Shown one piece after another: positions 10,065 through 52,818 of a stretch of DNA of 64,000 nucleotides. Within the stretch, counting starts at the first letter, position 1. The number at the start of each line of letters is the position of its first letter. The notes beneath the pieces were generated by a model, which saw nothing but the letters and a program-made list of their open reading frames with translations, did not search any database and was not told the DNA's origin. The translations under genes and the position numbers were made by a program. The DNA is taken from IMG/VR virus record IMGVR_UViG_3300025121_000011, positions 271,170 to 335,169 of that record, one strand, 5' to 3'.

Positions 10065-10170
10065 TTTAATAACGAGCGGTTCCGGAAAAAGCTATCCGGA
10101 TAGTGAGAGTGGCGAAGGTCTCACGAACAAGTGGAGTAGCTTCCATACGATCCTGATCCCCATAAGTTAC

Positions 10171-10250
10171 AATCCGGTGGTAGCTCAGCAAGGTTAGAGC
10201 GCTCAGACAACTGAGAAAACGCGGGTTCAATTCCCGCCCCCGTATTACTA
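10171..10250 (+). ncRNA. tRNA-like element with a 4-nt anticodon loop
   Basis: D arm GCTC...GAGC; CTCAG-acaa-CTGAG; T arm GCGGG-TTCAATT-CCCGC; poor acceptor stem. Confidence 0.5.
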
Positions 10251-10405
10251 CGAAAGCGGTGATGGTGAGCAGCCCGAGATCTACAGTAATAGACGTATGA
10301 GTGGATGCGTTAGAGACACCTGCGGAGTCCTTGAGATGTTGATGTAAGGGTCTCACCACTATTTAACTTTTCTAACATTTAACCCTTTTAACAAAGGAGC
10401 TTCCG

Positions 10406-27028: not shown

Positions 27029-28117
27029 ATGCGATTTATTCATTTTCCAAAAATTGGTCAATTCAAGGATGCTATTCATTCGATTCGTCAACGAGGCGCT
27101 TATGTAGGTAGAGATGTTAATGGCGATATTATTTATGATAGTTCTATTTTGATGCCAAAAATTACATTCATTGGTTCTGTTAAAATGCATGGTACTAATT
27201 CTGCTGTATCTTTTCATCGTATGGAAGGAGTGAGGCAGGCTCAATCTAGGAATAAGATTTTATCTATAGAATCAGATAACAATGGATTTTGTAGATTTAC
27301 AGAGTCTATTCCCGAAGATGTTTGGGATTTTCTTTTTAATTCTCTATTATCTCCACTAATTACTGAGCCATATCTTTTTGGACGAGTAACGGTTTTTGGA
27401 GAATGGATTGGTCCCGGTGTTCAGGGTGGTGAAATTGGTATTAAATATCTTCCGAATAAAATCTTTGTAGTGTTCGGAGTATATGTTGGGGAGCGTGATG
27501 AATTAGAAGATAAAACTCCCACCGGATACTTTGTTCCTCTTTGTGATATTCCATCTTTCAATGATGAATCTTATCATCTGAATGATAATAGAATTTATTT
27601 AATTACTGATTTAGCTCCAACTTTCAAAATAGAAGTCGATTGTAATTATCCAGAAATTTCTAGGAATAAGTTGGTCGAATTAACTATGCAAGTTGAAGCT
27701 AAGTGCCCAGTCGCCAATTACTTTGGAATTGAAGGAACGGGAGAGGGCATCGTATGGTGCTCAATTACGGAAGGGTGGATGGGTCCAGATTTTTGGTTTA
27801 AGACCAAGGGAGAAAAGCATTCCGCTTCAAAGATAAAAAAGATAGCCGAAGTAGATGTAACAAAGGTAGAGGGAGTAATTGCGTTTTTAGAAGAGACTCT
27901 AACTGAAGTTAGATTGAATCAAGCTTTGGAATACTTAAAAGAAAAAGAGATGCCTATCGATCGAAGTAGCACAGGCGAGTTTGTTCGGTGGATGATCAAT
28001 GACGTTACTACTGAAGAGGCTATAATGATGGAAGCCTCAGGACTTACAGTAAAAGAAGTTGGTCCCAAATTAGGCACAGCCGCCAGGCAGTGGTTTTTTA
28101 ATCAACTTAATAAGTAG
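27029..28117 (+). CDS. RNA ligase, Rnl2 family
   Basis: nucleotidyltransferase motifs KMHGTN, FGEW, EGIVW, FKTKGEKH. Confidence 0.8.
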   Translation: MRFIHFPKIGQFKDAIHSIRQRGAYVGRDVNGDIIYDSSILMPKITFIGSVKMHGTNSAVSFHRMEGVRQAQSRNKILSIESDNNGFCRFTESIPEDVWDFLFNSLLSPLITEPYLFGRVTVFGEWIGPGVQGGEIGIKYLPNKIFVVFGVYVGERDELEDKTPTGYFVPLCDIPSFNDESYHLNDNRIYLITDLAPTFKIEVDCNYPEISRNKLVELTMQVEAKCPVANYFGIEGTGEGIVWCSITEGWMGPDFWFKTKGEKHSASKIKKIAEVDVTKVEGVIAFLEETLTEVRLNQALEYLKEKEMPIDRSSTGEFVRWMINDVTTEEAIMMEASGLTVKEVGPKLGTAARQWFFNQLNK

Positions 28118-28358
28118 GAGATGTCCATGTCTTTTACATTTGTTAATGTACTTTTCATTCTCTTTATTTATATGATAGTTTTTGGTTATCCACTTCGTGG
28201 TATAATTTTATTATTTTTATGGATAATAGATTGTTTTCCAGAAACAAAACATGATCGTTTGTTAATAATTTCTTCATGTATACTTCCAGTATTTGGAGAG
28301 TGTGTGGTTCTTTGGTTCTTAATTAAGCAAATGATTAAGTGGATAAAGGAGGGAAAAG

Positions 28359-28685
28359 GTGATTAAAATTAACGGTAAAACATTTTTTACAACTAATATT
28401 TCAAATGTTTCTATTCGTAATAATGAAATATATATCGACGGAAAGTTGGTAGGCGATAGTAAAGATGCAGAACAGGGTATTCTTACTGTCAAGATTGAGG
28501 GTAATTTGGTTAGCTTAATTTGTGATGCAACAGTAGAAGTAACAGGCAATGTAAATGGTAGCATTAGCGCTGGTAACTCTGTTTACTGTGGTAATGTTAA
28601 TGGAAATGTTAATTGTGGAAATTCTGCTCATTGTAATAATATTGAAGGCAATGTAACTGCTGGAAATTCGGTTCATAAATTATAA
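28359..28685 (+). CDS. beta-helix (bactofilin-like) protein
   Basis: repeated GNV.G.(I/V)..GNS..C units. Confidence 0.55.
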   Translation: MIKINGKTFFTTNISNVSIRNNEIYIDGKLVGDSKDAEQGILTVKIEGNLVSLICDATVEVTGNVNGSISAGNSVYCGNVNGNVNCGNSAHCNNIEGNVTAGNSVHKL

Positions 28686-28980
28686 AGAATTGATTCTTGT
28701 AATAAAATTTATGTAGTCGAAAAGATTATTATCTTAGAAAAAAAAGTATCAAGATAATGTATCGATATAAAGCCACGGGATTGCTTTGATTTAGCGTAAG
28801 GATGGCGGACTCAGGTCCGCTATTTGGCGCATTGGTTGTCATGGATTAATAGAGGTGATAATTGTATAATAAAAGTTTTATTGATCTTAGTAAAGATAAG
28901 TCAATGAATTGTAGCTAAGGTTTTATTATTTTGATTCGAAAATCGATTGTTCAATACTCAGGATAGAAAGGGAAATAATA

Positions 28981-30342
28981 ATGATTATACGATTTACATC
29001 GACCAATCCAAACGCACTTGATATTCTTAAAAAGAATCCAGAAAGTTTTTCAGGTATTCAATTGAGAAGTCATAAAAATGGTGTGGCTATAGGTAGGATT
29101 ATTTCCGCAAAGATTCCTATTGAATATCATATGATCTTTCAAGATACTAAATATAGTTACTCTCAGGATTCCTCTAATCAGATTGATTTTCAAAGTTATT
29201 GCAATCCTCGTGCAGCACTTGGTTTAATTGGAGAGTTACTCCGGCACGTATTAGTATCAGATCAAGATTGGCGGGATACAGATATTCCATGGCTTAACTC
29301 TACAATTGGAGAAGTTGATACAAGAGACTTTAACCACACTATTATAGTAGATAATTTATATGCAGATGGTTTTAACTTAGATGGAGGGCTGGTTTTAGAA
29401 AAGTATTTTAAGGAGATTTCTCTAAAAAGAAATGGTCAGAATCAGTTTGAGCTAAAGATAGATGTCTGTCGAGATACAATACATTATACCATTAATTTAT
29501 TGGCTTTTGTATGTATGTATTTGGCGGCAACTAATAAACAGCCTTGGTATCTTAACCGAGATATAGCATCAAAATACATTAGAGTTTTAGAAAATATTGG
29601 TGACGTGCCATATTTTATTTTATATCTTTTTGCCCGTTCCTGTCTTCCATCGGAAGAATTATTTAATGAATTCGCTCCTCGATTGGAGAATATTTTTTAC
29701 AGCTATGATGATCGAGCAAATGATCTAACTATGGTATATGGAAATACTCAATCAATGAGATTGCGAAGTATTTCTGATTTGCTTTTAACTAATGATAAAA
29801 TTTTTTCTAACATTATAGAAATTGGTTGTGGCGATGGAGATTATCCTCGCCGATTAGCAAAGAAGTTGAATAATGGATTAAGTTGGTGGTCATATGATAT
29901 TGAAGATCATAGTTATCTTAATCGTAAAATTCCAGAAATGATGGGAAAATTAGCAACATTTAAATTTACTCAAGAGTGGGATCAAATTCCTTTATTGGAT
30001 AACCCTATAGTATTGTTAGTAGAAGTAATTGAGCATATGTCGGTTGAAGAAGCGATAGAATTAATCTGTCGAATTTTAGATAAGCACTCTCCGACACAAT
30101 TAATTATTACTACTCCAAATAGGACATTTAATAATTATTATCGGTTTGATCCCGAAGATGATGGATTTAGACACAGCGATCACAATTTTGAAATGACTCA
30201 GGAGCAATTTAAAGAATATATTCTTAGTATCATTAAATTGCTCCCATATGATGCATCCTTTTTCGGAATTGGTGATCGAATTGATGCAGATTATACTACT
30301 CAAGGAGTGGTATTAACTCGTAAAGATCCTGGGTCAAGCTAA
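28981..30342 (+). CDS. hen1: Hen1-type RNA 3'-terminal 2'-O-methyltransferase
   Basis: EIGCGDG SAM-binding motif; EVIEH, ITTPN and FRHSDHNFE motifs; N-terminal activation domain. Confidence 0.85.
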   Translation: MIIRFTSTNPNALDILKKNPESFSGIQLRSHKNGVAIGRIISAKIPIEYHMIFQDTKYSYSQDSSNQIDFQSYCNPRAALGLIGELLRHVLVSDQDWRDTDIPWLNSTIGEVDTRDFNHTIIVDNLYADGFNLDGGLVLEKYFKEISLKRNGQNQFELKIDVCRDTIHYTINLLAFVCMYLAATNKQPWYLNRDIASKYIRVLENIGDVPYFILYLFARSCLPSEELFNEFAPRLENIFYSYDDRANDLTMVYGNTQSMRLRSISDLLLTNDKIFSNIIEIGCGDGDYPRRLAKKLNNGLSWWSYDIEDHSYLNRKIPEMMGKLATFKFTQEWDQIPLLDNPIVLLVEVIEHMSVEEAIELICRILDKHSPTQLIITTPNRTFNNYYRFDPEDDGFRHSDHNFEMTQEQFKEYILSIIKLLPYDASFFGIGDRIDADYTTQGVVLTRKDPGSS

Positions 30343-30800
30343 TGTGGGGCATTAGTCGTAAAGATTCTAGCCCATGTAATGTAGTACCACCACTTTTTAT
30401 TAAATATTTAGATTATTTAGTGAGAGATGGACAATTATATTATATGAAGAGAAATTCTATAAGTCCATCTGTAATGATTCCAGATTCAGCTTACAGTTGG
30501 GGCTGGGATAATGCCGGGAATTATGGATTTGTTTGGCGCGGACCTAATGCCTATGAAGGGAATTTGCCATCCGATTTAGCTGGAATATTTCCACTGTGGG
30601 ATATAATTTGGTCTTTTGCTTATCGTTATGAAAGACATCTTGTAGCAGAACAGAATTGGAATGCAACTCAAAGAGAATACTTTTATATCCTTCCTGATAG
30701 ATTTTTGGAATTAGAAGAAATAAGAGAGTTATGCGAACAAAATCTTTGGGTTGAGGCCGCTTCTTTATATGAGGTTAAGAAAAAAATATGGTGCGATTAA
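30342..30800 (+). CDS. hypothetical protein
   Basis: translationally coupled to hen1. Confidence 0.6.
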   Translation: MWGISRKDSSPCNVVPPLFIKYLDYLVRDGQLYYMKRNSISPSVMIPDSAYSWGWDNAGNYGFVWRGPNAYEGNLPSDLAGIFPLWDIIWSFAYRYERHLVAEQNWNATQREYFYILPDRFLELEEIRELCEQNLWVEAASLYEVKKKIWCD

Positions 30801-30998
30801 CTTTGAAATTTCCAAATATTACTGCTGATATTTTAGAGGAAAAGTTAAAGGATGCTGTTGAAAAATTTACATTATCCGCAGAGTATTCTGATGGCGAAGT
30901 AATCATTATTGGATCAAAAGAGGCAATTCATATAATTCAAAAGGCATATAAAATACAACAGATGCTTTCATCTATGACAGTCAATTAGTGAGGCTTGC

Positions 30999-31409
30999 AT
31001 GTCTGATTATGAGTTTGAATCAAATAGTTTGTTAAATGCTCTTCAACACATTGATTGGGATAAGTTAGTTCTTAATAAAAATTCAGGTATGGCACGTTTG
31101 CTTACTGGAAGAGATGATTCTATTCCACTTAATAAAATACAAGTGAAGATTGTGTATTCAGATTATAATCCGGTTGGATGGGCTTGGGTTTTTCCATATA
31201 TTGATTATGATGGCCGTCGGCGCCTCGGATTTATGATTTTTATTCAAAGAGAATATCGTCGCAAAGGCTTGGGATCTAAATTGTTAGATTGGGGTCGAAA
31301 CATTGCACGTCAAAAGCACATTAAATTTATTGTATATCCATGGGATAAAAAAGGACATTTGTTTTTTGAATCAGCCGGAATAACAAGTAGAAACAAAGGG
31401 GACTGGTAA
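30999..31409 (+). CDS. GNAT acetyltransferase
   Basis: YRRKGLGSKLL acetyl-CoA-binding motif A. Confidence 0.75.
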   Translation: MSDYEFESNSLLNALQHIDWDKLVLNKNSGMARLLTGRDDSIPLNKIQVKIVYSDYNPVGWAWVFPYIDYDGRRRLGFMIFIQREYRRKGLGSKLLDWGRNIARQKHIKFIVYPWDKKGHLFFESAGITSRNKGDW

Positions 31410-32635
31410 TGGGTAAACGATATTTAACTGAAAAAGAAGAGGGGCGTATTCGTCGAGCTATTAAGCAGAAGATTCAGTTTTTTTCGCCTACTATCTCTCC
31501 AGCTCCAAAAGATATGACTCGTAGAGAGATTGAAAGCATTCGTTCTGCAATCATGATTTATCATGAAGCTGGTATGAAAGGTGTTGTTATTCAACCAAAG
31601 TATATGGGTTCTTATTGTGATATTTATTTGCATCGAGATCTTGATAAGACTAAATTTTATTCTCGTCGTGGTTATGAAGTTAGACTTGATTTTGAAATCT
31701 TGATTCAAGCAGTTAAATATTTGCATAATAAGTTTTTTTCCGATGAGTGTGAAATTAATTTTAAAGATGCAGAATTAATCATTATTCAATCCGAGCTTAT
31801 GCCTTGGCATGCTTTAGGTGGAGGATTAATTGAGCGAGATTTTGGAGGGTATGAAATCTCTCACCGTATTCACCAAAGGTATTTTGCATCTACTGGCATT
31901 AAAAAAGATGTAGAGTCTTTAACAGAAGATCCGATTTATCGTCAATTTTTAGAAGATAAGTGTGTTATGGATCGTAAGACACTTCTTAAAAAGTATCCAA
32001 TGCATATTGCTTCTCAATATGAAGCTTTAGAAGCTCTTGCTTTTCCAGATGTAGAACAGTATCTTCAAGATATTGAAGTTTATTCCGAACAGCTTTCTCT
32101 ATATGGTTCGGCAGGAGAATTGCATTTTAAACCTTTTAATATTTTAAAGATTGTATATTGTGATGGGCGGGAGGTAATTCCTGGTGATCATAAATTTGGA
32201 TTTTTATCAGTGAGATTAAATCAAGAAGAAAATCCAATGTTTGAAATCGATTTCTCAACACCAGAATTGGATAAACAAATCGATTTAGCTTATAAATTCT
32301 TTAATACATTAACTGATGATAAAAAGATGGAGGGAGTAATTATCAAGCCGATTGGGATATGGAATCCTGATGTTGCACCAATGTTTAAGGTTCGAAATAA
32401 TAATTACTTACAAATGATTTATGGTGTCAATTTTCAGCGTGAGTATGATTATTATCTTAATAAACGAAGCATTGGTGGAAAAGTAAGGGCTTCTAAAAAC
32501 CAATGGAATATTGCACAAGAAATTATTAAAATTCCTATGACGGAAATTAGTGATGACAATGTTAATTACACCAAATTAATTCGTGGTAGAATTTATGAAG
32601 AAGATTATGAGAGGTTGTTAGATTCTAGATTATAA
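31409..32635 (+). CDS. Pnkp-type RNA ligase domain, stand-alone (no kinase or phosphatase module)
   Basis: QPKYMGS, SELMPW, EGVIIKP and KVRNNNYLQMIYG motifs; C-terminal DSRL; close to hen1. Confidence 0.8.
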   Translation: MGKRYLTEKEEGRIRRAIKQKIQFFSPTISPAPKDMTRREIESIRSAIMIYHEAGMKGVVIQPKYMGSYCDIYLHRDLDKTKFYSRRGYEVRLDFEILIQAVKYLHNKFFSDECEINFKDAELIIIQSELMPWHALGGGLIERDFGGYEISHRIHQRYFASTGIKKDVESLTEDPIYRQFLEDKCVMDRKTLLKKYPMHIASQYEALEALAFPDVEQYLQDIEVYSEQLSLYGSAGELHFKPFNILKIVYCDGREVIPGDHKFGFLSVRLNQEENPMFEIDFSTPELDKQIDLAYKFFNTLTDDKKMEGVIIKPIGIWNPDVAPMFKVRNNNYLQMIYGVNFQREYDYYLNKRSIGGKVRASKNQWNIAQEIIKIPMTEISDDNVNYTKLIRGRIYEEDYERLLDSRL

Positions 32636-43186: not shown

Positions 43187-43272
43187 AGGGTGGTATGCAA
43201 ATGGTTAAGTAGTTAGTTTGATAAGCTGGTGCCTTCATAGTATATGAGTTTAAATCTTATTTGTCCCTACCA
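43187..43272 (+). pseudogene. degenerate tRNA (GAT loop, Ile-like)
   Basis: weak cloverleaf; ttGATaa loop; ends ACCA; promoter-motif variant just upstream. Confidence 0.4.
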
Positions 43273-43291: not shown

Positions 43292-43666
43292 TCATTTTAA
43301 ATGTAAATTGAAATGGGTTTGTCTGTGACAATTAGCGCACAGTAAGATACATTTATCAAGTTCAGTTTTGATCTTATCAAGTTTGGTGCCTTTATAATTA
43401 GATATGGAGAAGTCTTTTTGAATTGGATTTCTATGGTGAAATTCTAAGGCGGCATCGCAAGTATTGTATCCGCATTCTTGACAATTACCACCAAGATATT
43501 CAATAGCTTCATGTTTTAATTTTCCAAAACAATCGATTCTAATGTTGTTCCAACAACTCCTACAATAGGAATAGGAGCGACCGTCACTTTTTATATAGAA
43601 ATCCTTAATGAGAAGTACCTGTTCACATTTTGTACAATATCTGGTGTTACCTGGTTCTTTTAACAC
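43292..43666 (-). CDS. HNH homing-type endonuclease
   Basis: CTKC and CRSC Zn motifs; LEFHH...ELDKCILLCANCH. Confidence 0.85.
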   Translation of the reverse strand: MLKEPGNTRYCTKCEQVLLIKDFYIKSDGRSYSYCRSCWNNIRIDCFGKLKHEAIEYLGGNCQECGYNTCDAALEFHHRNPIQKDFSISNYKGTKLDKIKTELDKCILLCANCHRQTHFNLHLK

Positions 43667-43823
43667 TTTGGTATTGTGGCCACCAAATGGTGAACATTCT
43701 AAACAATATTTCCGCGATTGGAGGTTTTTAGTCTTTCCATCGATGTTAATTGAAAATGGAAAGAGTTTGTTGCATTTTTTTGCAAAGTTTTGGCATGTGG
43801 CTGTCTCCTGAAGATACGATATG

Positions 43824-43858
43824 GACCCTTAGCTCAGTTGGTTAGAGCGTTCGCCTTA
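43824..43858 (+). pseudogene. 5' half of a tRNA, truncated at the anticodon loop by an HNH gene
   Basis: GGACCCTTAGCTCAGTTGGTTAGAGCGTTCGCC followed by the HNH 3' end. Confidence 0.6.
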
Positions 43859-43862
43859 ACTA

Positions 43863-44288
43863 TTAAGAATCTTCTGAAACTATTTTCCTAGAATTGAATG
43901 TTCTTATTCTGTGGCAGTTAGCGCAAACTAATTCGCATTTTGAAATTTCGTTTGACAGTCTTGCTAAAGATACTCCTTTGTTTCGAGCAATACTAATATT
44001 AAATTCCTTATTTTTAAGGTGGTCAAAATCCATCACATAAGTTGGGTATGTGATACCACAATCAGTACATGGAGCGTCTTTTGCCTTTGCAATTACATCT
44101 AGTATAGATTGTTCTCTAATACTTTTCCTCTTTCGATAAGCATCTTTGTTAGATTGATAATGAGCTTTACTCATAATCTTATTGCACTCTCGACATCGAT
44201 TATGACGCTTGTTTAAAGATTTGTTTTCAAATGGGAAATCAGTAAGTAATAGGGTTTCGTGACATACATTACATTCTTTGGTAAGCAT
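43863..44288 (-). CDS. HNH homing-type endonuclease
   Basis: PCTDC...MDFDH...EISKCELVCANCHRIRT. Confidence 0.85.
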   Translation of the reverse strand: MLTKECNVCHETLLLTDFPFENKSLNKRHNRCRECNKIMSKAHYQSNKDAYRKRKSIREQSILDVIAKAKDAPCTDCGITYPTYVMDFDHLKNKEFNISIARNKGVSLARLSNEISKCELVCANCHRIRTFNSRKIVSEDS

Positions 44289-44341
44289 AAATCCTCCGTA
44301 TAATTTATGCTTATAAATTAGTAGATTCTTTAGTAAATTTT

Positions 44342-44418
44342 AGGGCCATAACTCAATTGGTTAGAGTGTCGCTCTCATAAAGCGAATGTTCTGAGTTCGA
44401 GTCTCAGTGGCCCTACCA
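44342..44418 (+). tRNA. tRNA(CAT): Ile2 (TilS substrate) or Met
   Basis: cloverleaf; TCGCT-ctCATaa-AGCGA; ends ACCA. Confidence 0.88.
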
Positions 44419-44597
44419 TTTTAATCTTAAATAATAAAGCCTTGTTGAGTCGCTAAAATCTGGGTTGGCTTCCCAGCTTCCCAGCTCCTCGCTCTGGAGT
44501 AGGTACGAGTCAAAGAGAATGCCTGCCCGGGTTTCCCCCGGCTGGGAGCCGGATTAAGTTCTCATAGTAGTGTGATGGTCCTATTCACTACATTCCT

Positions 44598-44662
44598 GGA
44601 ACAAATAGTTTAATTGGGAGAACATTGACGAAAGGTGTGGGTTCGAGTCCTGCTTTGATTTT
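44598..44662 (+). ncRNA. tRNA-like RNA lacking an anticodon arm (degenerate copy)
   Basis: D-loop-like segment and T arm GTGGG-TTCGAGT-CCTGC; paralogue of 44939. Confidence 0.4.
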
Positions 44663-44693
44663 TTATATTAATCTTAAAATCGCGAGGAGTAAT

Positions 44694-44906
44694 ATGACTG
44701 TATTTCTTGTTGTAAAAGATTACAATCGTGAGTGTCCAAAGGACATAATTATGTCAGCCTTTTATAATAAAGAGGATGCCAAGACTTTTATGAAAAATAC
44801 TTTTGAAGAGATATGTAATTGTCCTGATCGGCAGACTGATGAAGATGAATTGGGATGTTTCAGATGTTGCTTGTGGATTGGTATTGATTCGATAGAGGTA
44901 AAATAA
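44694..44906 (+). CDS. small hypothetical protein
   Basis: GAGGAG RBS. Confidence 0.55.
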   Translation: MTVFLVVKDYNRECPKDIIMSAFYNKEDAKTFMKNTFEEICNCPDRQTDEDELGCFRCCLWIGIDSIEVK

Positions 44907-44938
44907 CATAGTGATCATCCTATTCATTACATATTAAT

Positions 44939-45009
44939 GGGCCAAATAGTTCAAGTGGGAGAATATCGTCGCGAGAAGATGTAGGTTCAAATCCTACTTT
45001 GAGCCCCCA
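44939..45009 (+). ncRNA. tRNA-like RNA with a truncated anticodon arm
   Basis: GGGCCAAA/TTTGAGCCC acceptor; T arm GTAGG-TTCAAAT-CCTAC; CCA end. Confidence 0.55.
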
Positions 45010-45026
45010 ATTTCATATTCATAGTT

Positions 45027-45079
45027 TGGGTACATTCAGCATAAATTTTTTTTACCATATAAAAACAAATCGTACCCAG
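45027..45079 (+). ncRNA. stem-CAGCA motif RNA, copy a
   Basis: TGGGTAC att CAGCA...GTACCCA G. Confidence 0.55.
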
Positions 45080-45118
45080 TGATTTAATCCTGGCTTTTGC
45101 CATTTAATGAGGTGTTTA

Positions 45119-45334
45119 ATGTGGAAGAATATTTTGGTTATGCTAATGCTTATGGGTTGCCCTACTGTTGAATCAGTTTCTGATGATGCAGCAGTAGTGG
45201 ATGATGCAGTAGTAGTTGAGACTCCGGTAGTTCAGTCTGATGCAGCAGTTGATGCGACTGTTACTACTCCGGTAGTTGATGAAAATGATGTTACTGCTGA
45301 TGTTGTAGAAAATGTTCCAGTTGCAACTGAGTAA
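45119..45334 (+). CDS. small acidic Val/Asp-rich lipoprotein
   Basis: signal peptide with LMGC lipobox. Confidence 0.6.
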   Translation: MWKNILVMLMLMGCPTVESVSDDAAVVDDAVVVETPVVQSDAAVDATVTTPVVDENDVTADVVENVPVATE

Positions 45335-45499
45335 ATAGGGAATAGGCATCACGGTCGCCTTTAAGTACGCCGTCATAGGTAAGTTTAGTTTTGGGTTGAT
45401 AACTATATTTAAGCAAACCTTAAACAGTTCATAATTTTAAGAAGAGATTTCTTATTATTCACAAATGAATGAGCCAATGATTGTGTCAGTTGGCATCGG

Positions 45500-45583
45500 T
45501 GCGGAGTATACAAGTGGTCAAAGTAGAGGCGCTCATAACGCTTTGCTATAGCTTCATGGGTTCGAATCCCATTTCCGCTCCCA
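45500..45583 (+). tRNA. tRNA(CAT) with a long variable arm and 1:72 mismatch (Met/fMet/Ile2 unresolved)
   Basis: AGGCG-ctCATaa-CGCTT; T arm ATGGG-TTCGAAT-CCCAT; CCA end. Confidence 0.75.
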
Positions 45584-45845
45584 ATGCTTGCACGAATATA
45601 GGTTCCGGTCGAAACACCTACAAAGTTTCGTAAAATCCTGTGAGTTTAGCCATCTGTAACCAACCAGGTCGGGTCAGGATTAAGCAACCGCAAGCGGGTC
45701 ATGCTAATATATTCTCATAACCTTTAGAAGTAGGATCGGAAAGAAATCCGGTAGGCAAGGTCGACTTACCCTGGTAAACTTCTTAAAGTGCTGCACTGGA
45801 ATAAAAAGCATACAGTTGGGTGATTGTCCTAGTCCCAACATCTTT

Positions 45846-46081
45846 AAGCCTTAACAGTTGGAGTTCTGTTTTTCATGAGTAAGCAGTGTCGGAGATTTAA
45901 TTTATTAAATCAATGACTAGGCTGAAAGTCGCTTTGCTGAATTTGATGATGCTTGTGTCAAAAGTATCTGATCTGAAAGCTTCAGACTTGATTGAATGCG
46001 AAAGTCATGGTTCTTAATTGACACTCCCCATGACAGTTAGTAAATCCAAGAGACGGTTAGGTTCGAATCCTAGGAGGCTTA
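45846..46081 (+). ncRNA. large tRNA-like RNA (acceptor stem and T arm enclosing ~200 nt)
   Basis: AAGCCTT/GAGGCTT acceptor; TTAGG-TTCGAAT-CCTAG T arm. Confidence 0.45.
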
Positions 46082-46086
46082 TTATT

Positions 46087-46434
46087 ATGAAAAAGCAAAA
46101 GGGTTGGATTATTATTGGTTTAAAACGAAACGGAGATTATGTTGGTTACATTGAAAATTCTTTTTCAATGGGACGCAGTTTAGAACGGGTTTTAGTTTTT
46201 CGTCCAAATCCTCTTTCTGAAAAAGAACATCCAAATAAGAGTGCTGTAGATAATGCTCGTTCACATTTAGCAAAACTTCAGGCTCTTGATGACCACACTG
46301 AGTGGTGGTTGTATCGAGTTGGTTCTTGTACTTGTCCCGTCAAAATTGATTGGGGTTCTTTATACGAAGAATATCGAGGAAGTACAAGAGTAAGTAATTT
46401 TAACTGGAGAAATCTTAAATTCAGTCGGAAATAG
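46087..46434 (+). CDS. hypothetical protein
   Basis: AGGAGG RBS overlapping the 3' end of the tRNA-like element. Confidence 0.6.
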   Translation: MKKQKGWIIIGLKRNGDYVGYIENSFSMGRSLERVLVFRPNPLSEKEHPNKSAVDNARSHLAKLQALDDHTEWWLYRVGSCTCPVKIDWGSLYEEYRGSTRVSNFNWRNLKFSRK

Positions 46435-46709
46435 AAGTATATTATTTGTTACCTGAGGGGATTTAAATGTCTGTGCCGAATGTAATTCAAAAGGCTTTTG
46501 ATCTTGATGAGAGGATTATTGCCGTGGCTTGGGATAAGATTGAGCCAGTGCTGATTTTATCTAAACCATGGCTCGAAAGTGCCGAAGAGGAGATGGTTCA
46601 AGAAGAGTTTTTAAGGCAAAGTGAAACATATCTATTATTTGATGAACTATGGCGATTTTTTGAAGATTGTGAATCAACTAGATATGATAGAGAATAGTTT
46701 TTGTTTTGA

Positions 46710-46866
46710 TGCCATGTAGCAAAGTAGGTAAATGCAAGTGTGGACTAAGCCAATATGGATGGTCTTGTAATCGAGAGAACAAGTTCCGGGATCATGGTGA
46801 AACCCATTGTTATTATTTAGCCCGACGAATAATGACGCGCTGGTTCGAGTCCAGCCATGGCAACTA
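46710..46866 (+). ncRNA. tRNA-like RNA with ~100 nt in place of the anticodon and variable arms
   Basis: TGCCATG/CATGGCA acceptor; D arm; GCTGG-TTCGAGT-CCAGC T arm; ends ACTA. Confidence 0.6.
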
Positions 46867-46871
46867 TTTTT

Positions 46872-46988
46872 TGCGGAATAGTGTAGTAGGGAGCACGCGT
46901 ATAATGTATCTTGATAAAGATGTATACAGCAATCAAACAAATCCATTGGGTGGACGAAGTATAGGTTCGAGTCCTATTTCTGCAACTA
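46872..46988 (+). ncRNA. tRNA-like RNA carrying a permuted stem-CAGCAA motif in the anticodon arm
   Basis: TGCGGAA/TTCTGCA acceptor; GTGT/GCAC D stem; ATAGG-TTCGAGT-CCTAT T arm; insert GTATCTTG-ataa-AGATGTATACAGCAA. Confidence 0.65.
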
Positions 46989-47027
46989 TTTGAGAAGACA
47001 TAACACTTAACAAAAGGAGATAATTAA

Positions 47028-47279
47028 ATGAAGAATTTTATGATTATTTTGGCAGCACTGTTTGCTTTTGGATGTGCAGAATCTAAGGTGATTAATGGTG
47101 TGGAGTATGAGCCATGTGGATTGCTGGATGACTCAGACTGTAAGGATCCTTCTATTCGTTATGAAGCTAACATTGGAAATGTCATCTGGGGAGTTATTTT
47201 GGTTGAGACTGTGGTTGTTCCGATTTGGCTTTTTGGGTTTGAGCTTTATGAGCCAACTTATGCAAAGCCGATCAAGTAA
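47028..47279 (+). CDS. small lipoprotein/membrane protein
   Basis: AAAAGGAG RBS; FAFGC lipobox; transmembrane segment. Confidence 0.7.
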   Translation: MKNFMIILAALFAFGCAESKVINGVEYEPCGLLDDSDCKDPSIRYEANIGNVIWGVILVETVVVPIWLFGFELYEPTYAKPIK

Positions 47280-47355
47280 GTAAAAATAATATAAAAATCT
47301 TTTGATTATTTTTAAAACGTAGCGTATGCTAAATGTAGCAATCAATTAAATTTAT

Positions 47356-47434
47356 GCCTCTGTAGCTCAGGATTGAGAGTGCCTGGCGTTTCGCTGGGAG
47401 GGTCGTTAGGTTAAAGTCTTAACCGGAGGCACCA
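47356..47434 (+). ncRNA. atypical tRNA-like RNA (cgTTTcg loop)
   Basis: GCCTCTG/CGGAGGC acceptor; ends ACCA; non-canonical anticodon and T loops. Confidence 0.55.
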
Positions 47435-47534
47435 TACAGGTTTGAGGGGAACGCGAAGAGATAGTCCTTAACGTAAGTATTCTATCGTGAGATAGAGTAG
47501 CCTACTACAATCATTTTATATAGATGTCATTTAT

Positions 47535-47627
47535 ATTTGAATAGCTTAGTGTCAAAGCGTTTGCGGCCTACTTCTTCGGATTCAAAAGCCGTAAAAGTCA
47601 TAGGTTAGATTCCTATTTCAAATACTA
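47535..47627 (+). ncRNA. tRNA-like RNA with an enlarged anticodon arm
   Basis: ATTTGAA/TTCAAAT acceptor; TTTGCGGC...GCCGTAAA stem with a 20-nt loop; ends ACTA. Confidence 0.55.
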
Positions 47628-47716
47628 TTTAAACTATAGGTTCACGGAACACACTCTTTCACGGTGGTTACTCACTTTAAATTGAAATATTTTTAGGTCT
47701 ATAGTTTAAATTTTTA

Positions 47717-47838
47717 AGGGATGCAATCAGCAATTAAATTTTTCTTTATGTAAAAACAAATCGCACCCTGATTTTTTTAGGATACAAACAGCAAATAAAC
47801 ATTCAACTTGTTTTTGAAAAACGTTTAATTGTATCCTG
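47717..47838 (+). ncRNA. two tandem stem-CAGCAA motif RNAs, copies b and c
   Basis: AGGGATGC aat CAGCAA...GCACCCTG; AGGATACAA a CAGCAA...TTGTATCCTG. Confidence 0.6.
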
Positions 47839-47870
47839 TTTATTATTAGTAGTAGCATTAAGGTGATAAT

Positions 47871-48161
47871 ATGATTCAAGCTATGACTGTATTGACAGCA
47901 GAACCGCATCCTAATGCGGATAGATTAAAAGTCTATACTCTACGTGCAAGTTATGATGAGCCAATTCTTCAGGTGTGTGCTAATCTAACCAATGTTTATA
48001 GTGTTGGTAATGTTGTAGCTGTTTGTTTAATTGGTCATGCATATGATGGTATGGTTATCAAATCCCGGAAGGTGCGTGGGGTTCTGTCTCAAGGAATGAT
48101 GATTGGTACTACAAAGGCTGTTTCAGGTTCTGATGTTACTGATTCATTTGTGATTGTGTAA
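47871..48161 (+). CDS. tRNA-binding OB-fold protein (Trbp111/PheT N-terminal-like)
   Basis: PHPNADRL...QVC...N...G..VAV...KVRGVLSQGM. Confidence 0.8.
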   Translation: MIQAMTVLTAEPHPNADRLKVYTLRASYDEPILQVCANLTNVYSVGNVVAVCLIGHAYDGMVIKSRKVRGVLSQGMMIGTTKAVSGSDVTDSFVIV

Positions 48162-48213
48162 AATATATAATTTAAAGTAATCTTCTTATGAATATTGTTA
48201 ATTTGTTTTTGTT

Positions 48214-48267
48214 TGGGTGCAACCAGCAAACTAAATAATTCAGGCTACTATTCTAAATTGCACCCAG
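48214..48267 (+). ncRNA. stem-CAGCAA motif RNA, copy d
   Basis: TGGGTGCAA c CAGCAA...TTGCACCCA G. Confidence 0.6.
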
Positions 48268-48343: not shown

Positions 48344-48952
48344 ATGTTAAGGATGGTTGGGCCCAAAATTCCTATGGATATTTATGTGGCGGCTTCTGGT
48401 GGACCAGACAGCATGGCTGTCTTGGATTTTCTTATTCGTGGTGGTCGTAAAATTACAGTTTTACATTTTGATCATGGGACTAAACATGGAGAAGATGCTA
48501 GAGAGTTTATTAGGGAGTATTGTCAGTCGAGAGATATTAAACTGATTATTGGAAATGAGATTAGAGAGCGAGACTCTAACGAGTCTATGGAAGAATATTG
48601 GCGTGATATGCGATATCAGTTTCTTGATCAGTATTCAGATAAGCCAATTGTCATGGCACATAATCTTGATGATCAGGTGATGAGTTGGGTATTTACTTCT
48701 TTGAATGGATTGCCAAAACTTATTCCTTATAACAGAAGGAACGTTATCCGTCCTTTCATTGTAACTTCTAAGCAGAATATGATTGATTGGTGTGAGCGAA
48801 ATGGGGTTCCGTATTTAACGGACCCAAGTAATGATGATACAAGATATATGAGAAATTTTATTAGAAAAGAAATTCTTCCTTCAGCTTTAGTTGTTAATCC
48901 AGGATTATATAAAGTAATCTTAAAGAAGATTTTAAGAAATTTTGAAGGATAA
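48344..48952 (+). CDS. tilS: tRNA(Ile)-lysidine synthetase (PP-loop domain only)
   Basis: SGGPDS, DHG, RY.F, AHNLDDQ, IRP, DPSN...RNFIR. Confidence 0.88.
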   Translation: MLRMVGPKIPMDIYVAASGGPDSMAVLDFLIRGGRKITVLHFDHGTKHGEDAREFIREYCQSRDIKLIIGNEIRERDSNESMEEYWRDMRYQFLDQYSDKPIVMAHNLDDQVMSWVFTSLNGLPKLIPYNRRNVIRPFIVTSKQNMIDWCERNGVPYLTDPSNDDTRYMRNFIRKEILPSALVVNPGLYKVILKKILRNFEG

Positions 48953-48964
48953 ATAATTATATTT

Positions 48965-49000
48965 TGGATATATGCAGCAATTAAATCACAAACTATCCAG
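48965..49000 (+). ncRNA. stem-CAGCAA motif, copy e, abutting the RBS of the DUF2828 gene
   Basis: TGGATA tatg CAGCAA...TATCCA G, then AGAGG and ATG 49013. Confidence 0.55.
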
Positions 49001-49012
49001 TAGAGGTGAAAT

Positions 49013-50464
49013 ATGAGTTTTGTAGACGCAATGACTTCTAATGATATGCTTACAGAAAATGGTGCCGTTACTCACAGCACCTCAGGAAAAGCAATTATGG
49101 ATATGTTTTTCCAGATCGGTGGTATGCGTGGCCATAGTGGTGAAGATGTAATTTCTTTATTTACTAAGGCTCTTGGAGAAGATCCTTTAACGGCAATGAA
49201 GATCTTGTTTTATAACCGCGATATTCGTGGTGGACAAGGAGAGCGGCAAACTTTTCGTTATATTATGTCTTATCTTGCTCAGTATCATCCGGAGCTTATT
49301 CGAAAGAATATGCATTTGATTCCGGAATACGGTCGGTGGGATGATATGTTTGTGTTTGTTGGAACCGGATTGGAGAATGATGCTTTTGCTTTAATTCGCA
49401 CTGCATTGCATGAGCAAAACGGTTTAGCCGCAAAGTGGTGTCCTCGTTTGAAGTCTTCTAAAAAGATTTTAGCAGCAAAACTGTGTGCATATCTTGGAAT
49501 GACTCCGAAGCAATATCGTCAAACGCTTGCGAGACTTACCAAGGTTGTTGAAACTCCAATGTGCGCTAATCAGTGGGAAGATATTAACTTTAGTCAGGTC
49601 CCTTCGGTAGCAATGAAAAATTATCGCAAGTCATTTGCGAGACATACTCCCAACGAGTGGGAACAGTATCTTGCTGCTTTAGAAAAGGGCGACCCGGCTG
49701 TTAAGATTAATGCAAGCGCTATTTTCCCACATGACATTATCAAACAGTGGGTTGCTGGTTCAGTCGGTTATTATAGGGTTACATCTCCAGATCGTCAAGA
49801 GATTCGCGCAGCCGAAGCACAGTGGAATGCTTTGCCTGATTATATGGGTGAGAATTCTGGAAAGGTATTGGTTATGGCCGATGTTTCGGGTTCTATGTAT
49901 TCTGGTTTAAATCCCAGTTTAGCTCCAATTCAGGCTTCCGTTTCTTTGGCGCTGTATTGTGCCGAACGATGTAAGGGGCCTTTTAAGAATTTTTACATGA
50001 GTTTTTCTGGAAATCCAGAATTTGTAAAGGTTCAAGGAAGTAATATTTACGAAAAAGTTATTAATATCAACAATAAAAATGTTGGATATAACACTGATAT
50101 TAATCGTGCTTTTGCGGTATTGTTGAGTCGCGCAAAGCAGCACTCTGTTTCACAGGCCGACATGCAAGAAACTTTATTGATTCTTTCAGATATGCAATTT
50201 GATTGCAGCGAAATTAGTGGAAAGACTAATTTTGAAACGATTCGAGATCAGTACCGTGCATCTGGTTATCAACTTCCTCAGATTGTTTTTTGGAATTTGA
50301 ATTCTAAGGGTGGTGTTCCGGTAAAAATAACTGATGATGGAGTAGCTTTAGTGTCCGGGTTTAGCCCAAGTATTCTTACTGCAATCCTGGGTGGAGAAGT
50401 ATCGCCCATGGCAGTTTTGAATAGGGCAATTCATAGTGGACGATATGATGCGGTAACTCTTTGA
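49013..50464 (+). CDS. DUF2828 family protein with C-terminal vWA domain (Ro60/TROVE-like architecture)
   Basis: TENG, RDIRGGQGER, YGRWDD, AAKWCPR; MIDAS DVSGSM; ILSDMQFD, IVFWNL, VSGFSP. Confidence 0.82.
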   Translation: MSFVDAMTSNDMLTENGAVTHSTSGKAIMDMFFQIGGMRGHSGEDVISLFTKALGEDPLTAMKILFYNRDIRGGQGERQTFRYIMSYLAQYHPELIRKNMHLIPEYGRWDDMFVFVGTGLENDAFALIRTALHEQNGLAAKWCPRLKSSKKILAAKLCAYLGMTPKQYRQTLARLTKVVETPMCANQWEDINFSQVPSVAMKNYRKSFARHTPNEWEQYLAALEKGDPAVKINASAIFPHDIIKQWVAGSVGYYRVTSPDRQEIRAAEAQWNALPDYMGENSGKVLVMADVSGSMYSGLNPSLAPIQASVSLALYCAERCKGPFKNFYMSFSGNPEFVKVQGSNIYEKVININNKNVGYNTDINRAFAVLLSRAKQHSVSQADMQETLLILSDMQFDCSEISGKTNFETIRDQYRASGYQLPQIVFWNLNSKGGVPVKITDDGVALVSGFSPSILTAILGGEVSPMAVLNRAIHSGRYDAVTL

Positions 50465-51292: not shown

Positions 51293-51332
51293 GTATTCAG
51301 TTTACAATTAATGTCGTAGTAACTCGGTTTTA

Positions 51333-52798: not shown

Positions 52799-52818
52799 TG
52801 ACAGAAGGTTTGTGAAAT

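What the first reader, a model, noticed from the sequence alone, without database searches (positions are those of the whole stretch)
44598..47627. Cluster of at least seven tRNA-like RNAs with missing, enlarged or non-canonical anticodon arms
Seen: elements at 44598, 44939, 45846, 46710, 46872, 47356 and 47535 (plus 10171) keep T arms and mostly acceptor stems, while the anticodon region ranges from absent to about 200 nt. Three in the cluster end in ACTA. The 44598 and 44939 copies share an upstream leader (CATAGT...TCCTATTCAYTACAT). Inference: retained pairing argues against simple decay. They may be decoys for anticodon nucleases or tRNA-sensing defences, or tRNA scaffolds that release cargo RNAs through RNase P/Z-type processing.
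Basis: partly seen in the sequence, partly recalled or inferred. Interest (0 to 1): 0.7.

Follow-up and report, generated by a model that had tools for sequence, protein, structure and literature searches.

The report
Phage tRNA-shaped RNAs lacking anticodons
A 335-kb groundwater phage carries at least eight genes for RNAs that keep the tRNA body but have no usable anticodon, placed inside its tRNA cluster just upstream of genes for a tRNA-binding protein and a Ro60-like ring protein, so they most likely act as protein-binding tRNA mimics rather than as decoders.

Summary
Besides 8 ordinary tRNAs, the window has tRNA-shaped elements at 44598, 44939, 45846, 46710, 46872, 47356, 47535 and 10174. 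Each keeps a T arm and a D arm, and all but 10174 a sound acceptor stem. The anticodon arm is deleted, capped or swollen to about 170 nt. Five pass Rfam's tRNA threshold; ARAGORN calls none. All 18 strict T arms in the genome lie on the + strand. Twelve of them have a perfect acceptor plus D arm, against 0.86 expected by chance.

Stems are maintained. The paralogues 44598/44939 and 46872/47535 differ by compensatory changes. The 47356 element belongs to a family found in related phages and unrelated phage contigs, with strong covariation.

The cluster lies between an RNA-repair block (Rnl, Hen1, Pnkp-ligase) and a conserved block: tRNA_bind, a TilS catalytic domain, and a DUF2828 protein whose model matches Ro60. 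Ro60-like genes of distant jumbo phages always follow tRNA arrays.

Best reading: non-decoding tRNA mimics, matured like tRNAs, serving as Y-RNA-like partners of these proteins. Function and expression are untested. A decoy role for anticodon nucleases is unlikely because the loops are gone. Closest precedents are YrlA Y RNAs and T4 species 1 RNA.

The parts
44598..44662 (+). tRNA-like E2. It has an acceptor stem with a bulged A in the 3' strand, a D arm and a canonical T arm. The anticodon arm is replaced by about 8 nt (UUGACGAA). No CCA is encoded.
   Evidence: Rfam tRNA 37.3 bits; sequence; paralogue of E3 (D7).
44939..45009 (+). tRNA-like E3, a paralogue of E2 with the same bulged-A acceptor. 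The anticodon arm is replaced by about 11 nt. It ends in discriminator C plus an encoded CCA (45007-45009).
   Evidence: Rfam tRNA 32.1 bits; MFE z-score -2.65; sequence.
45846..46081 (+). tRNA-like E5. It has a perfect 7-bp acceptor (AAGCCUU/GAGGCUU), a D-like hairpin, a T arm with a UUCGAAU loop, and about 170 nt of structured insert where the anticodon arm should be. Its 3' strand supplies the GGAGG that lies 8 nt before the ATG of the next ORF.
   Evidence: sequence. Not detected by Rfam or ARAGORN.
46710..46866 (+). tRNA-like E6. It has a perfect acceptor, D arm and T arm, about 70 nt in place of the anticodon arm, and a long variable-arm-like hairpin. The trailer is A-CUA-UUU.
46872..46988 (+). 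tRNA-like E7. A 53-nt two-hairpin insert replaces the anticodon loop. The acceptor and T arm resemble phage tRNA-Met genes. The trailer is A-CUA-UUU.
   Evidence: Rfam tRNA 40.8 bits; cloverleaf MFE.
47356..47434 (+). tRNA-like E8. It has a 7-bp acceptor, a UAGCUCAG D arm, a capped anticodon stem (the 7-nt loop CGUUUCG has G at position 33 and C at 37, and can close to 5 nt), a 6-bp T stem with loop UUAAAGU, and an encoded A-CCA. It belongs to a conserved family.
   Evidence: Fold; family members; covariation; model R1 78.9 bits, against 40.9 bits or less for ordinary tRNAs.
47535..47627 (+). tRNA-like E9, a paralogue of E7. An 8-bp extended arm containing a UUCG-closed hairpin replaces the anticodon arm. 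The T loop is UUAGAUU and the trailer is A-CUA-UUU.
   Evidence: Rfam tRNA 49.1 bits; MFE equals centroid cloverleaf.
10174..10244 (+). tRNA-like E10. The D and T arms are good and the anticodon stem is closed by a 4-nt loop, but the acceptor stem is weak. It may be decaying.
   Evidence: Rfam tRNA 36 bits; fold; sequence.
44342..44418 (+). Ordinary tRNA(CAU) with an encoded CCA at the head of the cluster.
   Evidence: ARAGORN; Rfam 69.2 bits.
45500..45583 (+). Odd tRNA(CAU) with a long variable arm, a U1-U72 mismatch and an encoded CCA.
   Evidence: ARAGORN; Rfam 41.1 bits. A similar tRNA sits next to TilS in L081.
44566..44593 (+). Leader hairpin before E2, with the conserved loop UGAU..UCCUAUU. 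Copies lie before E3 (44905-44932) and E5 (45814-45841), with different but still pairing stems.
   Evidence: D4; folds; sequence.
47871..48161 (+). Free-standing tRNA_bind protein (Trbp111/PheT-B2 type), the first gene after the cluster.
   Evidence: Pfam PF01588, 41 bits; PDB matches to the PheRS beta N-terminal region and to 3bu2; syntenic in relatives.
48344..48952 (+). TilS-like PP-loop enzyme consisting of the catalytic domain only.
   Evidence: Pfam PF01171, 117 bits. It aligns only to residues about 20-227 of solved TilS proteins.
49013..50464 (+). Ro60-like protein (TROVE plus vWA; Pfam DUF2828 and DUF7788).
   Evidence: Pfam; AF2 model with pLDDT 74.8; Foldseek top 13 hits are all Ro60/TROVE, with E from 9e-9 to 3e-4.
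27029..32635 (+). RNA-repair block upstream of the cluster: RNA ligase (27029-28117), Hen1 N-domain protein (28981-30342) and Pnkp-type ligase (31409-32635).
   Evidence: Pfam; same synteny in a relative.

Best explanation
These are genes for non-decoding, tRNA-derived RNAs that the phage keeps on purpose.

Shown:
- They retain the parts of a tRNA that the maturation enzymes and body-binding proteins read: a 7-bp acceptor stem stacked on a T arm, a D arm, and either an encoded CCA or a CCA-less trailer.
- They have lost the part the ribosome reads. The anticodon arm is deleted, capped by a short loop or tetraloop, or replaced by a multi-hairpin module.
- They sit on the coding strand inside the phage's tRNA array. 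The array lies between an RNA-repair block and a conserved block of three genes: a tRNA_bind protein, a TilS catalytic domain and a Ro60-like ring protein.
- At least one type (E8) is a conserved family with covarying stems.

Inferred:
- They are co-transcribed with the tRNAs.
- RNase P cuts them out at the 5' end.
- The 3' end is finished by trimming to the encoded CCA. For the three A-CUA-UUU elements, an RNase Z-type cut is followed by CCA addition, for which the phage has two candidate enzymes.
- The stable L-shaped products then serve as protein-binding RNAs. The most likely role is Y-RNA-like adaptors or gates for the phage Ro60-like protein and the Trbp111-like protein, in a tRNA and RNA quality-control or repair RNP.
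- The variable module at the anticodon-arm position would give each RNA its own partner or specificity.
For: Reality of the elements:
- Rfam hits.
- T-arm census: 12 of 18 strict T arms have a perfect acceptor plus D arm, against 0.86 expected by chance, and all 18 lie on the + strand.
- Cloverleaf MFE folds.

Selection on structure:
- Compensatory changes between E2 and E3, and between E7 and E9 (sequence; repeats).
- E8-family covariation exceeds all 500 shuffles.
- The E8 model separates family members (50.9 bits or more) from ordinary tRNAs (40.9 bits or less).

Conservation of the class:
- Relatives L082 and L084 carry arrays of 8-9 CCA-ended tRNA-shaped genes with non-canonical loops in the same slot.
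- Unrelated phage contigs carry E8-like genes, some with long UUCG-capped arms.

Genomic context:
- tRNA_bind, TilS catalytic domain and Ro60-like fold.
- The same synteny in every relative fetched.
- In 41 of 41 loci from distant jumbo phages, tRNA genes lie within 5 kb upstream of the Ro60-like gene.
- Two CCA-adding-type genes in the genome.

Precedent:
- The Ro60 of Thermus phage phiLo binds two upstream Y-like RNAs (PMC12135203).
Against: - There is no expression or processing data; no RNA run holds the phage.
- No Rfam Y RNA or YrlA hit at E up to 5.
- The ends form an acceptor stem, not the Ro60-binding helix of known Y RNAs.
- The GNCGAAN0-1G motif occurs in E2, in E7 and near E10, which is only about what chance allows (0.27 per kb genome-wide).
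- Eight to nine such RNAs is more than the 1-4 Y RNAs known per Ro60.
- E8-like genes in the unrelated contigs L152, L170 and L182 show no Ro60-like gene in the roughly 14 kb of each locus by tblastn.
- The large-insert elements E5, E6 and E7 have no identified orthologues, so their inserts are untested by covariation.
- E10 and 43187 look partly decayed.
Confidence: 0.4

Rival explanations
1. They are sponges or decoys for host factors that attack or sense tRNAs. By presenting many tRNA bodies and CCA ends, they would soak up toxins or sensors that read the acceptor end, the CCA or the elbow. This would protect real tRNAs, or hide phage tRNAs from a tRNA-sensing defence.
For: The phage invests heavily in tRNA damage control next to the cluster: RNA ligase, Hen1, Pnkp-ligase and Metallophos, plus two CCA-adding-type genes. 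So tRNA attack is a plausible selective pressure. The elements keep the acceptor, CCA and elbow but not the loop. There are many copies with diverse acceptor sequences.
Against: The best-known tRNA-directed defences cut anticodon loops (established knowledge of PrrC, RloC and PARIS AriB). These RNAs lack such loops, so they cannot act as decoys for them. No toxin, sensor or anti-defence gene is linked to the cluster here. The idea does not explain the large structured inserts.
Confidence: 0.2
2. They are tRNA scaffolds or punctuation marks. The tRNA frame would recruit RNase P and Z to cut a long transcript. That cut would release and stabilise either the module inserted at the anticodon position or the small mRNAs that lie between the elements.
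For: Inserts of 26 to about 170 nt are held in otherwise intact frames. In the window the elements alternate with five small ORFs. The 3' strand of E5 contains the only SD-like GGAGG before the next ORF. T4 species 1 RNA is a 139-nt stable RNA with a T arm in the T4 tRNA cluster.
Against: In L082 and L084 the same class forms contiguous arrays without ORFs between the elements, and with only short capped arms, so there is no cargo. E2 and E3 carry nothing at all. The inserts match no Rfam family and have no antisense targets above chance in the phage genome.
Confidence: 0.15
3. They are dying tRNA genes in a fast-turnover region. The anticodon arms would have been destroyed by deletions or by remnants of mobile insertions, and the rest simply has not decayed yet.
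For: A truncated tRNA 5' half at 43822-43862 lies beside an HNH gene and another minus-strand ORF. E10 and 43187 have weak acceptor stems. No orthologue was found for E2/E3, E5, E6, E7 or E9. Distant relatives have mostly ordinary tRNAs in the same slot.
Against: Damage is confined to one arm in eight or more genes, while acceptor, D and T stems stay fully paired. Duplicated copies have diverged by pair-preserving changes only. The E8 type is conserved with covariation across distinct phages. Stable caps such as UUCG tetraloops are not what random decay produces.
Confidence: 0.15
4. They are real decoding tRNAs that need splicing or editing to restore an anticodon loop.
For: The phage encodes RNA ligases and end-healing enzymes. 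E7 and 45500 resemble tRNA-Met genes.
Against: There is no Rfam group I or II intron hit. Removing any insert leaves no 5-bp stem with a 7-nt loop carrying U33 and R37. E2 and E3 have no arm at all. The inserts are too short for self-splicing introns.
Confidence: 0.03

Closest known systems
YrlA-type bacterial and phage Y RNAs, the partners of Ro60/Rsr (Chen et al. 2014, PMC4201824; phiLo Yrl1/2, PMC12135203)
   Same: They are encoded on the same strand a short distance upstream of a Ro60-type gene, next to RNA-repair genes. They carry tRNA-like D and T arms. [quoted passage not shown] A long helix projects from the anticodon-stem position.
   Different: In YrlA the 5' and 3' ends form the Ro60-binding helix and the acceptor-like stem is closed. 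Here the acceptor is open, often with an encoded CCA, and the anticodon-side arm is closed, so the topology is permuted. There is no Rfam Y RNA match. The Ro-binding motif is not enriched. There are eight or more RNAs rather than 1-4. The Ro60-like protein belongs to the DUF2828 branch and shares only 12-18% identity with solved Ro60 proteins.
Phage T4 species 1 RNA (rnaC) and species 2 RNA (rnaD)
   Same: They are stable small RNAs of unknown function encoded inside a phage tRNA cluster, directly after a tRNA. rnaC (139 nt) ends in a canonical T arm followed by a closing stem.
   Different: There is no sequence similarity. The T4 RNAs have no clear D arm or 7-bp acceptor in the MFE fold. T4 has two of them, and in the stretch examined no Ro60-like or tRNA_bind gene lies beside them.
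Ordinary phage tRNA genes
   Same: Location, strand, acceptor, D arm, T arm and CCA or trailer features are the same. E7 and E8 clearly descend from tRNA-Met-like and tRNA-Thr/Val-like genes.
   Different: They have no anticodon loop. ARAGORN rejects all of them. The E8 family has a 6-bp T stem and a non-canonical T loop.
tRNA-like domain of tmRNA
   Same: It is a tRNA mimic with an acceptor and a T arm but no anticodon arm, like E2 and E3.
   Different: The elements here have no tag reading frame, no pseudoknots and no G3-U70 pair. ARAGORN and Rfam find no tmRNA in the window.

Membership tests
Decoding tRNA | 7-bp acceptor stem stacked on a T arm, plus a D arm | tested here: met
   Perfect or near-perfect in E2, E3, E5-E9. 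Weak in E10.
Decoding tRNA | 5-bp anticodon stem with a 7-nt loop carrying U33 and a purine at position 37 | tested here: not met
   The arm is absent in E2 and E3. E10 has a 4-nt loop. The E8 loop CGUUUCG has G33 and C37. E9 has an extended capped arm. E5-E7 have 53 to about 170 nt of multi-hairpin insert. ARAGORN calls none of them.
Decoding tRNA | Score above the Rfam RF00005 gathering threshold | tested here: inconclusive
   Five of eight pass (32-49 bits) only because the model skips the anticodon region. E5, E6 and E8 fail.
Y RNA / YrlA | Encoded next to a Ro60/TROVE gene | tested here: met
   The cluster ends 1.4 kb upstream of a protein whose model matches Ro60 structures. The synteny is conserved.
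Y RNA / YrlA | Helix formed by the 5' and 3' ends that carries the Ro60-binding motif (GNCGAAN0-1G or CGAA bulge) | tested here: not met
   The ends form a tRNA acceptor stem. The motif occurs in E2 and E7 only, at a frequency compatible with chance.
Y RNA / YrlA | Match to the Rfam Y RNA or YrlA covariance models | tested here: not met
   No such hit at E up to 5 in 44000-48200, nor at gathering score in the whole window.
Y RNA / YrlA | Physical binding to Ro60 | not testable with these tools
   This needs EMSA or RIP with the 49013-50464 protein.
tmRNA | G3-U70 alanine identity, a tag ORF and pseudoknots | tested here: not met
   No tmRNA by ARAGORN or Rfam. The 3:70 pairs are C-G, A-U or G-C.
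Intron-containing tRNA (group I) | Recognisable intron core, with the anticodon loop restored after removal | tested here: not met
   No intron family hit. No canonical loop can be rebuilt from the flanks (sequence).
tRNA pseudogene | Unconstrained substitutions that break stems, with no conservation | tested here: not met
   Stems are intact, paralogues differ by pair-preserving changes, and the E8 family covaries. Inconclusive for E10, 43187-43268 and the 43822 fragment.
E8-type phage tRNA-like family (defined here) | UAGCUCAG D arm, GUCG junction, 6-nt 5' T strand, T loop UKAAAGU or UUAAACU, capped anticodon stem | tested here: met
   47356-47434 scores 78.9 bits with model R1, although it was itself one of the nine training rows. 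An independent member, L082 6300-6375, scores 50.9 bits, and the best ordinary tRNA scores 40.9 bits.

The most novel reading that the evidence does not exclude
Large phages encode a whole repertoire of anticodon-less, CCA-ended tRNA mimics. These form a new, permuted class of Y-like RNAs. Each would use a different module at the anticodon-arm position to direct a phage Ro60-like and Trbp111-like RNP, possibly with the domain-stripped TilS enzyme, to particular host or phage RNAs or nucleases. The same idea would at last give a function to tRNA-cluster RNAs such as T4 species 1 RNA.
Probability: 0.2. Interest if true: 0.85.

Novelty: new variant of a known kind. Interest (0 to 1): 0.62.

Why it matters
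Aberrant tRNA-like genes in phage tRNA clusters are usually dismissed as pseudogenes. The stable RNAs in the T4 tRNA cluster have had no assigned function since the 1970s.

This case shows such RNAs under structural selection. They are multiplied into a repertoire, and they are fixed next to a Ro60-like protein, a free tRNA-binding domain and RNA-repair enzymes.

That gives a concrete, testable hypothesis: tRNA-derived adaptor RNAs working in a phage RNA quality-control or repair RNP. It also defines one conserved family (E8 type) that can be searched for and assayed. If the hypothesis is right, it widens the Y RNA concept and adds a new layer to the phage-host conflict over tRNAs.

Tried and rejected
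- Near relatives for covariation of each element. IMG/VR searches with the cluster's 115-aa ORF, with TilS and with DNA patterns for E2/E3 gave nothing closer than 56-63% protein identity. The E7/E9 pattern returned mostly ordinary tRNA genes of other phages, many of them tRNA-Met-like. blastn of all elements against 80 Ro60 loci found nothing.
- Expression. No RNA run holds the stretch. Three metatranscriptome runs from the same study lay nothing on it. This is no evidence of absence.
- Rfam at E up to 5. No Y RNA, YrlA, tmRNA, intron, ribozyme, GOLLD or ROOL hit.
- Ro60-binding motif. GNCGAAN0-1G is present in E2, in E7 and at 10111, but the genome-wide rate of 0.27 per kb makes this weak.
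- Antisense function of inserts and spacers. No complementarity to the phage genome beyond 12-16 nt chance matches.
- Spacers 44419-44597, 45584-45845 and 47434-47534. Their fold energies are not distinguishable from shuffles.
- Sigma-70 promoters and intrinsic terminators. Counts are at shuffle level.
- Cellular origin of the E8 family. A strict pattern found 1 hit in 185,579 genomes, in a Sphingomonas prophage tail region and of doubtful membership.
- A loose hand-written cloverleaf scan was too permissive and was discarded.
- Complex prediction was not used. RNA partners get no verdict, and gene neighbourhood alone does not justify a protein-protein job.

Full report
**Origin.** The window is the last 64 kb of a 335,169-bp IMG/VR virus record with direct terminal repeats, that is, a jumbo phage. 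It is assembled in several groundwater and soil metagenomes. An identical copy lies on a 336-kb metagenome contig (L145/L178). All tRNA-type features lie on the + strand, as do nearly all genes.

**Observation.** ARAGORN finds 8 ordinary tRNAs.
- 47535-47624: 49.1 bits.
- 46872-46985: 40.8 bits.
- 44599-44661: 37.3 bits.
- 10174-10244: 36 bits.
- 44940-45005: 32.1 bits.

In each alignment the acceptor, D and T regions match, and the anticodon region is skipped as a deletion or an insert. The other three elements were checked directly.
- 45846-46080 and 46710-46862 have perfect 7-bp acceptors, D hairpins with GG, and canonical GGUUCGAnUCC T arms.
- 47356-47434 folds as a cloverleaf with an encoded A-CCA.

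A census gives the chance level. The genome holds 18 strict T arms, none on the minus strand and 17 in the window. Twelve have a perfect 7-bp acceptor plus D arm within 260 nt, against 0.86 expected with random 3' strands. That census also found a further member outside the window, at genome 3569-3749, with an insert of about 125 nt.

**Anatomy.** The elements fall into four kinds.
- Arm deleted: E2 and E3. These paralogues are 77% identical and share an unusual bulged A in the 3' acceptor strand. E3 ends in C-CCA.
- Arm capped: E8, E9 and E10. The E8 loop CGUUUCG has G33 and C37, and can close to 5 nt. E9 has an 8-bp stem and then a UUCG-closed hairpin. E10 has a 4-nt loop.
- Arm replaced by a multi-hairpin module: E7 (53 nt), E6 (about 70 nt plus a variable-arm-like hairpin), E5 (about 170 nt) and genome 3569 (about 125 nt).
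- Weak or broken pieces: 43187-43268 and a truncated 5' half at 43822-43862 beside an HNH gene.

All ordinary tRNAs here encode CCA. E3 and E8 do too. E6, E7 and E9 read A-CUA-UUU instead. The phage has two PolyA_pol/CCA-adding-type genes.

**Is the structure maintained?** Three lines of evidence say yes.
- E2 versus E3: acceptor pairs 2 and 3 change from G-C and C-G to A-U and A-U. Two T-stem pairs and two D-stem pairs change on one side while staying paired. The linker between the arms diverges freely.
- E7 versus E9: four acceptor pairs change on both sides (D1).
- E8 type: this family recurs three times in L082, twice in L084, and in unrelated phage-like metagenome contigs (L107, L108, L132, L152, L170, L175, L182, L192, L207).

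For the E8 family, nine alignable members give these figures:
- 94.8% of cells are paired, against 72.7% in shuffles.
- 11 of 17 pairs have changes on both sides.
- None of 500 shuffles reaches the observed values.
- Sliding the 3' partners drops pairing to 35-53%.

The acceptor was used to pick members, so it is biased. The T stem was not, and 4 of its 6 pairs covary. A covariance model separates members (50.9 bits or more) from ordinary tRNA-Thr and tRNA-Val genes (40.9 bits or less). A strict pattern has a single, doubtful hit in 185,579 prokaryote genomes. Members in L152 and L175 carry long arms closed by tetraloops, like E9. The class is therefore real and under selection. For the large inserts of E5-E7 no orthologues were found, so their internal structure is untested.

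**Context.** Upstream lies an RNA-repair block: RNA ligase, Hen1 N-domain protein and Pnkp-type ligase. A DNA ligase and a Metallophos phosphoesterase follow it. Three genes come immediately downstream of the cluster.
- A 96-aa free-standing tRNA_bind protein.
- A 202-aa TilS-like protein consisting only of the catalytic PP-loop domain.
- A DUF2828/DUF7788 protein. Its AlphaFold model (pLDDT 74.8) has Ro60/TROVE structures as its 13 best PDB matches, led by the Ro60 of Thermus phage phiLo, then Xenopus Ro and Deinococcus Rsr.

TilS-like and Ro60-like genes are adjacent in every relative fetched, and tRNA_bind lies upstream in most.

In L082 and L084, the stretch before tRNA_bind is filled with 8-9 back-to-back, CCA-ended tRNA-shaped genes. 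Most have loops or T loops that are not canonical, and several pair up as orthologues between the two phages.

In more distant jumbo phages, 41 of 41 Ro60-like loci with enough upstream DNA have tRNA genes within 5 kb upstream (median 12). Only 12 of 53 have any downstream. Those tRNAs are mostly ordinary. So the slot before the Ro60-like gene is a tRNA array in this whole group of phages. In the window's lineage, much of that array consists of non-decoding derivatives.

**Mechanism.** What is shown: these are tRNA-derived genes that keep the acceptor/T helix, the elbow and the 3' end but not the anticodon, and they are linked to tRNA-binding, Ro60-like and RNA-repair genes. What is inferred:
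- They are co-transcribed with the tRNAs.
- RNase P and 3'-end enzymes mature them.
- They accumulate as stable L-shaped RNAs.
- They act by binding proteins.

The closest documented system is Ro60 with its Y RNAs. These are encoded just upstream of the gene. Bacterial YrlA contains a tRNA-like domain that tRNA enzymes accept (PMC4201824). The phage phiLo Ro60 binds two upstream Y-like RNAs and can recruit host PNPase (PMC12135203). Jumbo-phage TROVE proteins have been noted as part of RNA-repair systems with a tRNA-like partner (PMC7824862).

The RNAs here would be a permuted version, with an open acceptor and a closed arm on the anticodon side. I hold the full model, with maturation and a Y-like role, at about 0.4. 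The narrower claim that they are functional non-decoding tRNA mimics I would put near 0.7.

**Rivals.**
- Sponge for factors that read the acceptor, CCA or elbow (0.2). A decoy for anticodon nucleases is unlikely, because the target loop is missing.
- Scaffold or punctuation role (0.15). The inserts and the alternation with five small ORFs fit. The cargo-free arrays in relatives and the lack of antisense targets do not.
- Decay (0.15). This is plausible for E10, 43187 and the 43822 fragment. It does not fit the intact, compensated stems elsewhere.
- Spliced or edited decoding tRNAs (0.03).

**Comparison with the known.**
- They are not decoding tRNAs, because the anticodon test fails.
- They are not members of the Rfam Y RNA or YrlA families: there is no model match, and the defining end-helix is absent.
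- They are not tmRNA and not intron-bearing tRNAs.
- T4 rnaC (species 1 RNA) is annotated in the T4 tRNA cluster with unknown function. It ends in a canonical T arm plus a closing stem, which makes it an old phage precedent for this kind of gene.
- My literature searches found no description of arrays of anticodon-less tRNA mimics next to phage Ro60 genes. The library is incomplete.

**Verdict.** This is a real, non-random and structurally maintained set of tRNA mimics. It is a new variant of known kinds (Y-like and tRNA-like ncRNAs, and the T4 stable RNAs). Function and expression are untested.

Noticed in passing
window 11183, 45028-45079, 47719-47770, 47780-47838, 48215-48266, about 48967-48999; also L082, L084, L087, L208, L209: There is a repeated hairpin element of the form GGRURC-N-CAGCAA, then 25-40 A/U-rich nt, then GYAYCC-(U/A)G. 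Its closing stems covary between copies and between phages. It usually ends right at the RBS of the next gene, including the Ro60-like and tRNA_bind genes. It gives weak Rfam hits to Dictyostelium class I RNA, which shares the CAGCAA motif. It may be a 5'-UTR regulatory hairpin, a small RNA or a phage promoter.
   Followed up: partly
window 45500-45583; L081 8443-8526: A tRNA with a CAU anticodon carries a long variable arm (type II shape). In the window it also has a U1-U72 mismatch and an encoded CCA. It is conserved next to the TilS-like gene in a related phage. Its amino-acid identity and decoding (AUG, or AUA after lysidine formation) are unclear.
   Followed up: partly
window 48344-48952 and 49013-50464; L082, L084, L087, L208, L209: A TilS consisting of the catalytic domain only (about 200 aa, lacking the C-terminal tRNA-binding domains) is always the immediate upstream neighbour of the Ro60-like gene. 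This raises the possibility that the two work together.
   Followed up: partly
window 43292-44288 and 43822-43862: A truncated tRNA 5' half (acceptor, D arm and the start of the anticodon stem) sits just upstream of a 141-aa minus-strand ORF. That ORF lies close to an HNH endonuclease gene. Together they look like the scar of a mobile-element insertion into a tRNA gene.
   Followed up: no
window 44566-44593, 44905-44932, 45814-45841: Leader hairpins lie 4-10 nt upstream of E2, E3 and E5. They share the loop UGAU..UCCUAKU and have different but still pairing stems. They may be a processing or protein-binding signal.
   Followed up: partly
genome 3569-3749 and genome 7244-7624, 83697-84062 (outside the window): A further tRNA-like gene with an insert of about 125 nt lies near the left end of the genome. 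The genome also has two PolyA_pol/CCA-adding-type nucleotidyltransferase genes.
   Followed up: partly
window 10263-10364: A 6-7-bp closing stem (GGUGAGC...GUCUCACC) is followed by the same ACUAUUU trailer seen on E6, E7 and E9, just downstream of E10. It may be another, more degenerate member without a T arm.
   Followed up: no
window 50657-54066: This is a block of metabolic genes: Ham1 NTP pyrophosphatase, HisG-like, a weak SAICAR-synthetase-like match, and a fused HisA/HisI/HisE protein. Histidine-pathway genes are unusual in a phage.
   Followed up: no
window 46057-46089: The T-stem and acceptor 3' strand of E5 contains the only Shine-Dalgarno-like GGAGG, 8 nt before the ATG of the 115-aa ORF at 46087. 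Folding or cleavage of E5 should therefore affect translation of that ORF.
   Followed up: no
L152 549-954 and 11663-13301; L086 9879-9958; L236: Other large-phage contigs carry similar oddities. L152 has two adjacent capped-arm tRNA-likes beside an EF-Ts gene and a tmRNA. L086 has a CCA-ended tRNA-like directly before TilS. L236 has a 66-nt CCA-ended element without D and anticodon arms.
   Followed up: partly
L243 (T4, AF158101 70908-71046): T4 species 1 RNA (rnaC) ends in a canonical T arm, CCGGGUUCGAAUCCCGG, plus a closing stem. Its MFE z-score is -4.57.
   Followed up: partly
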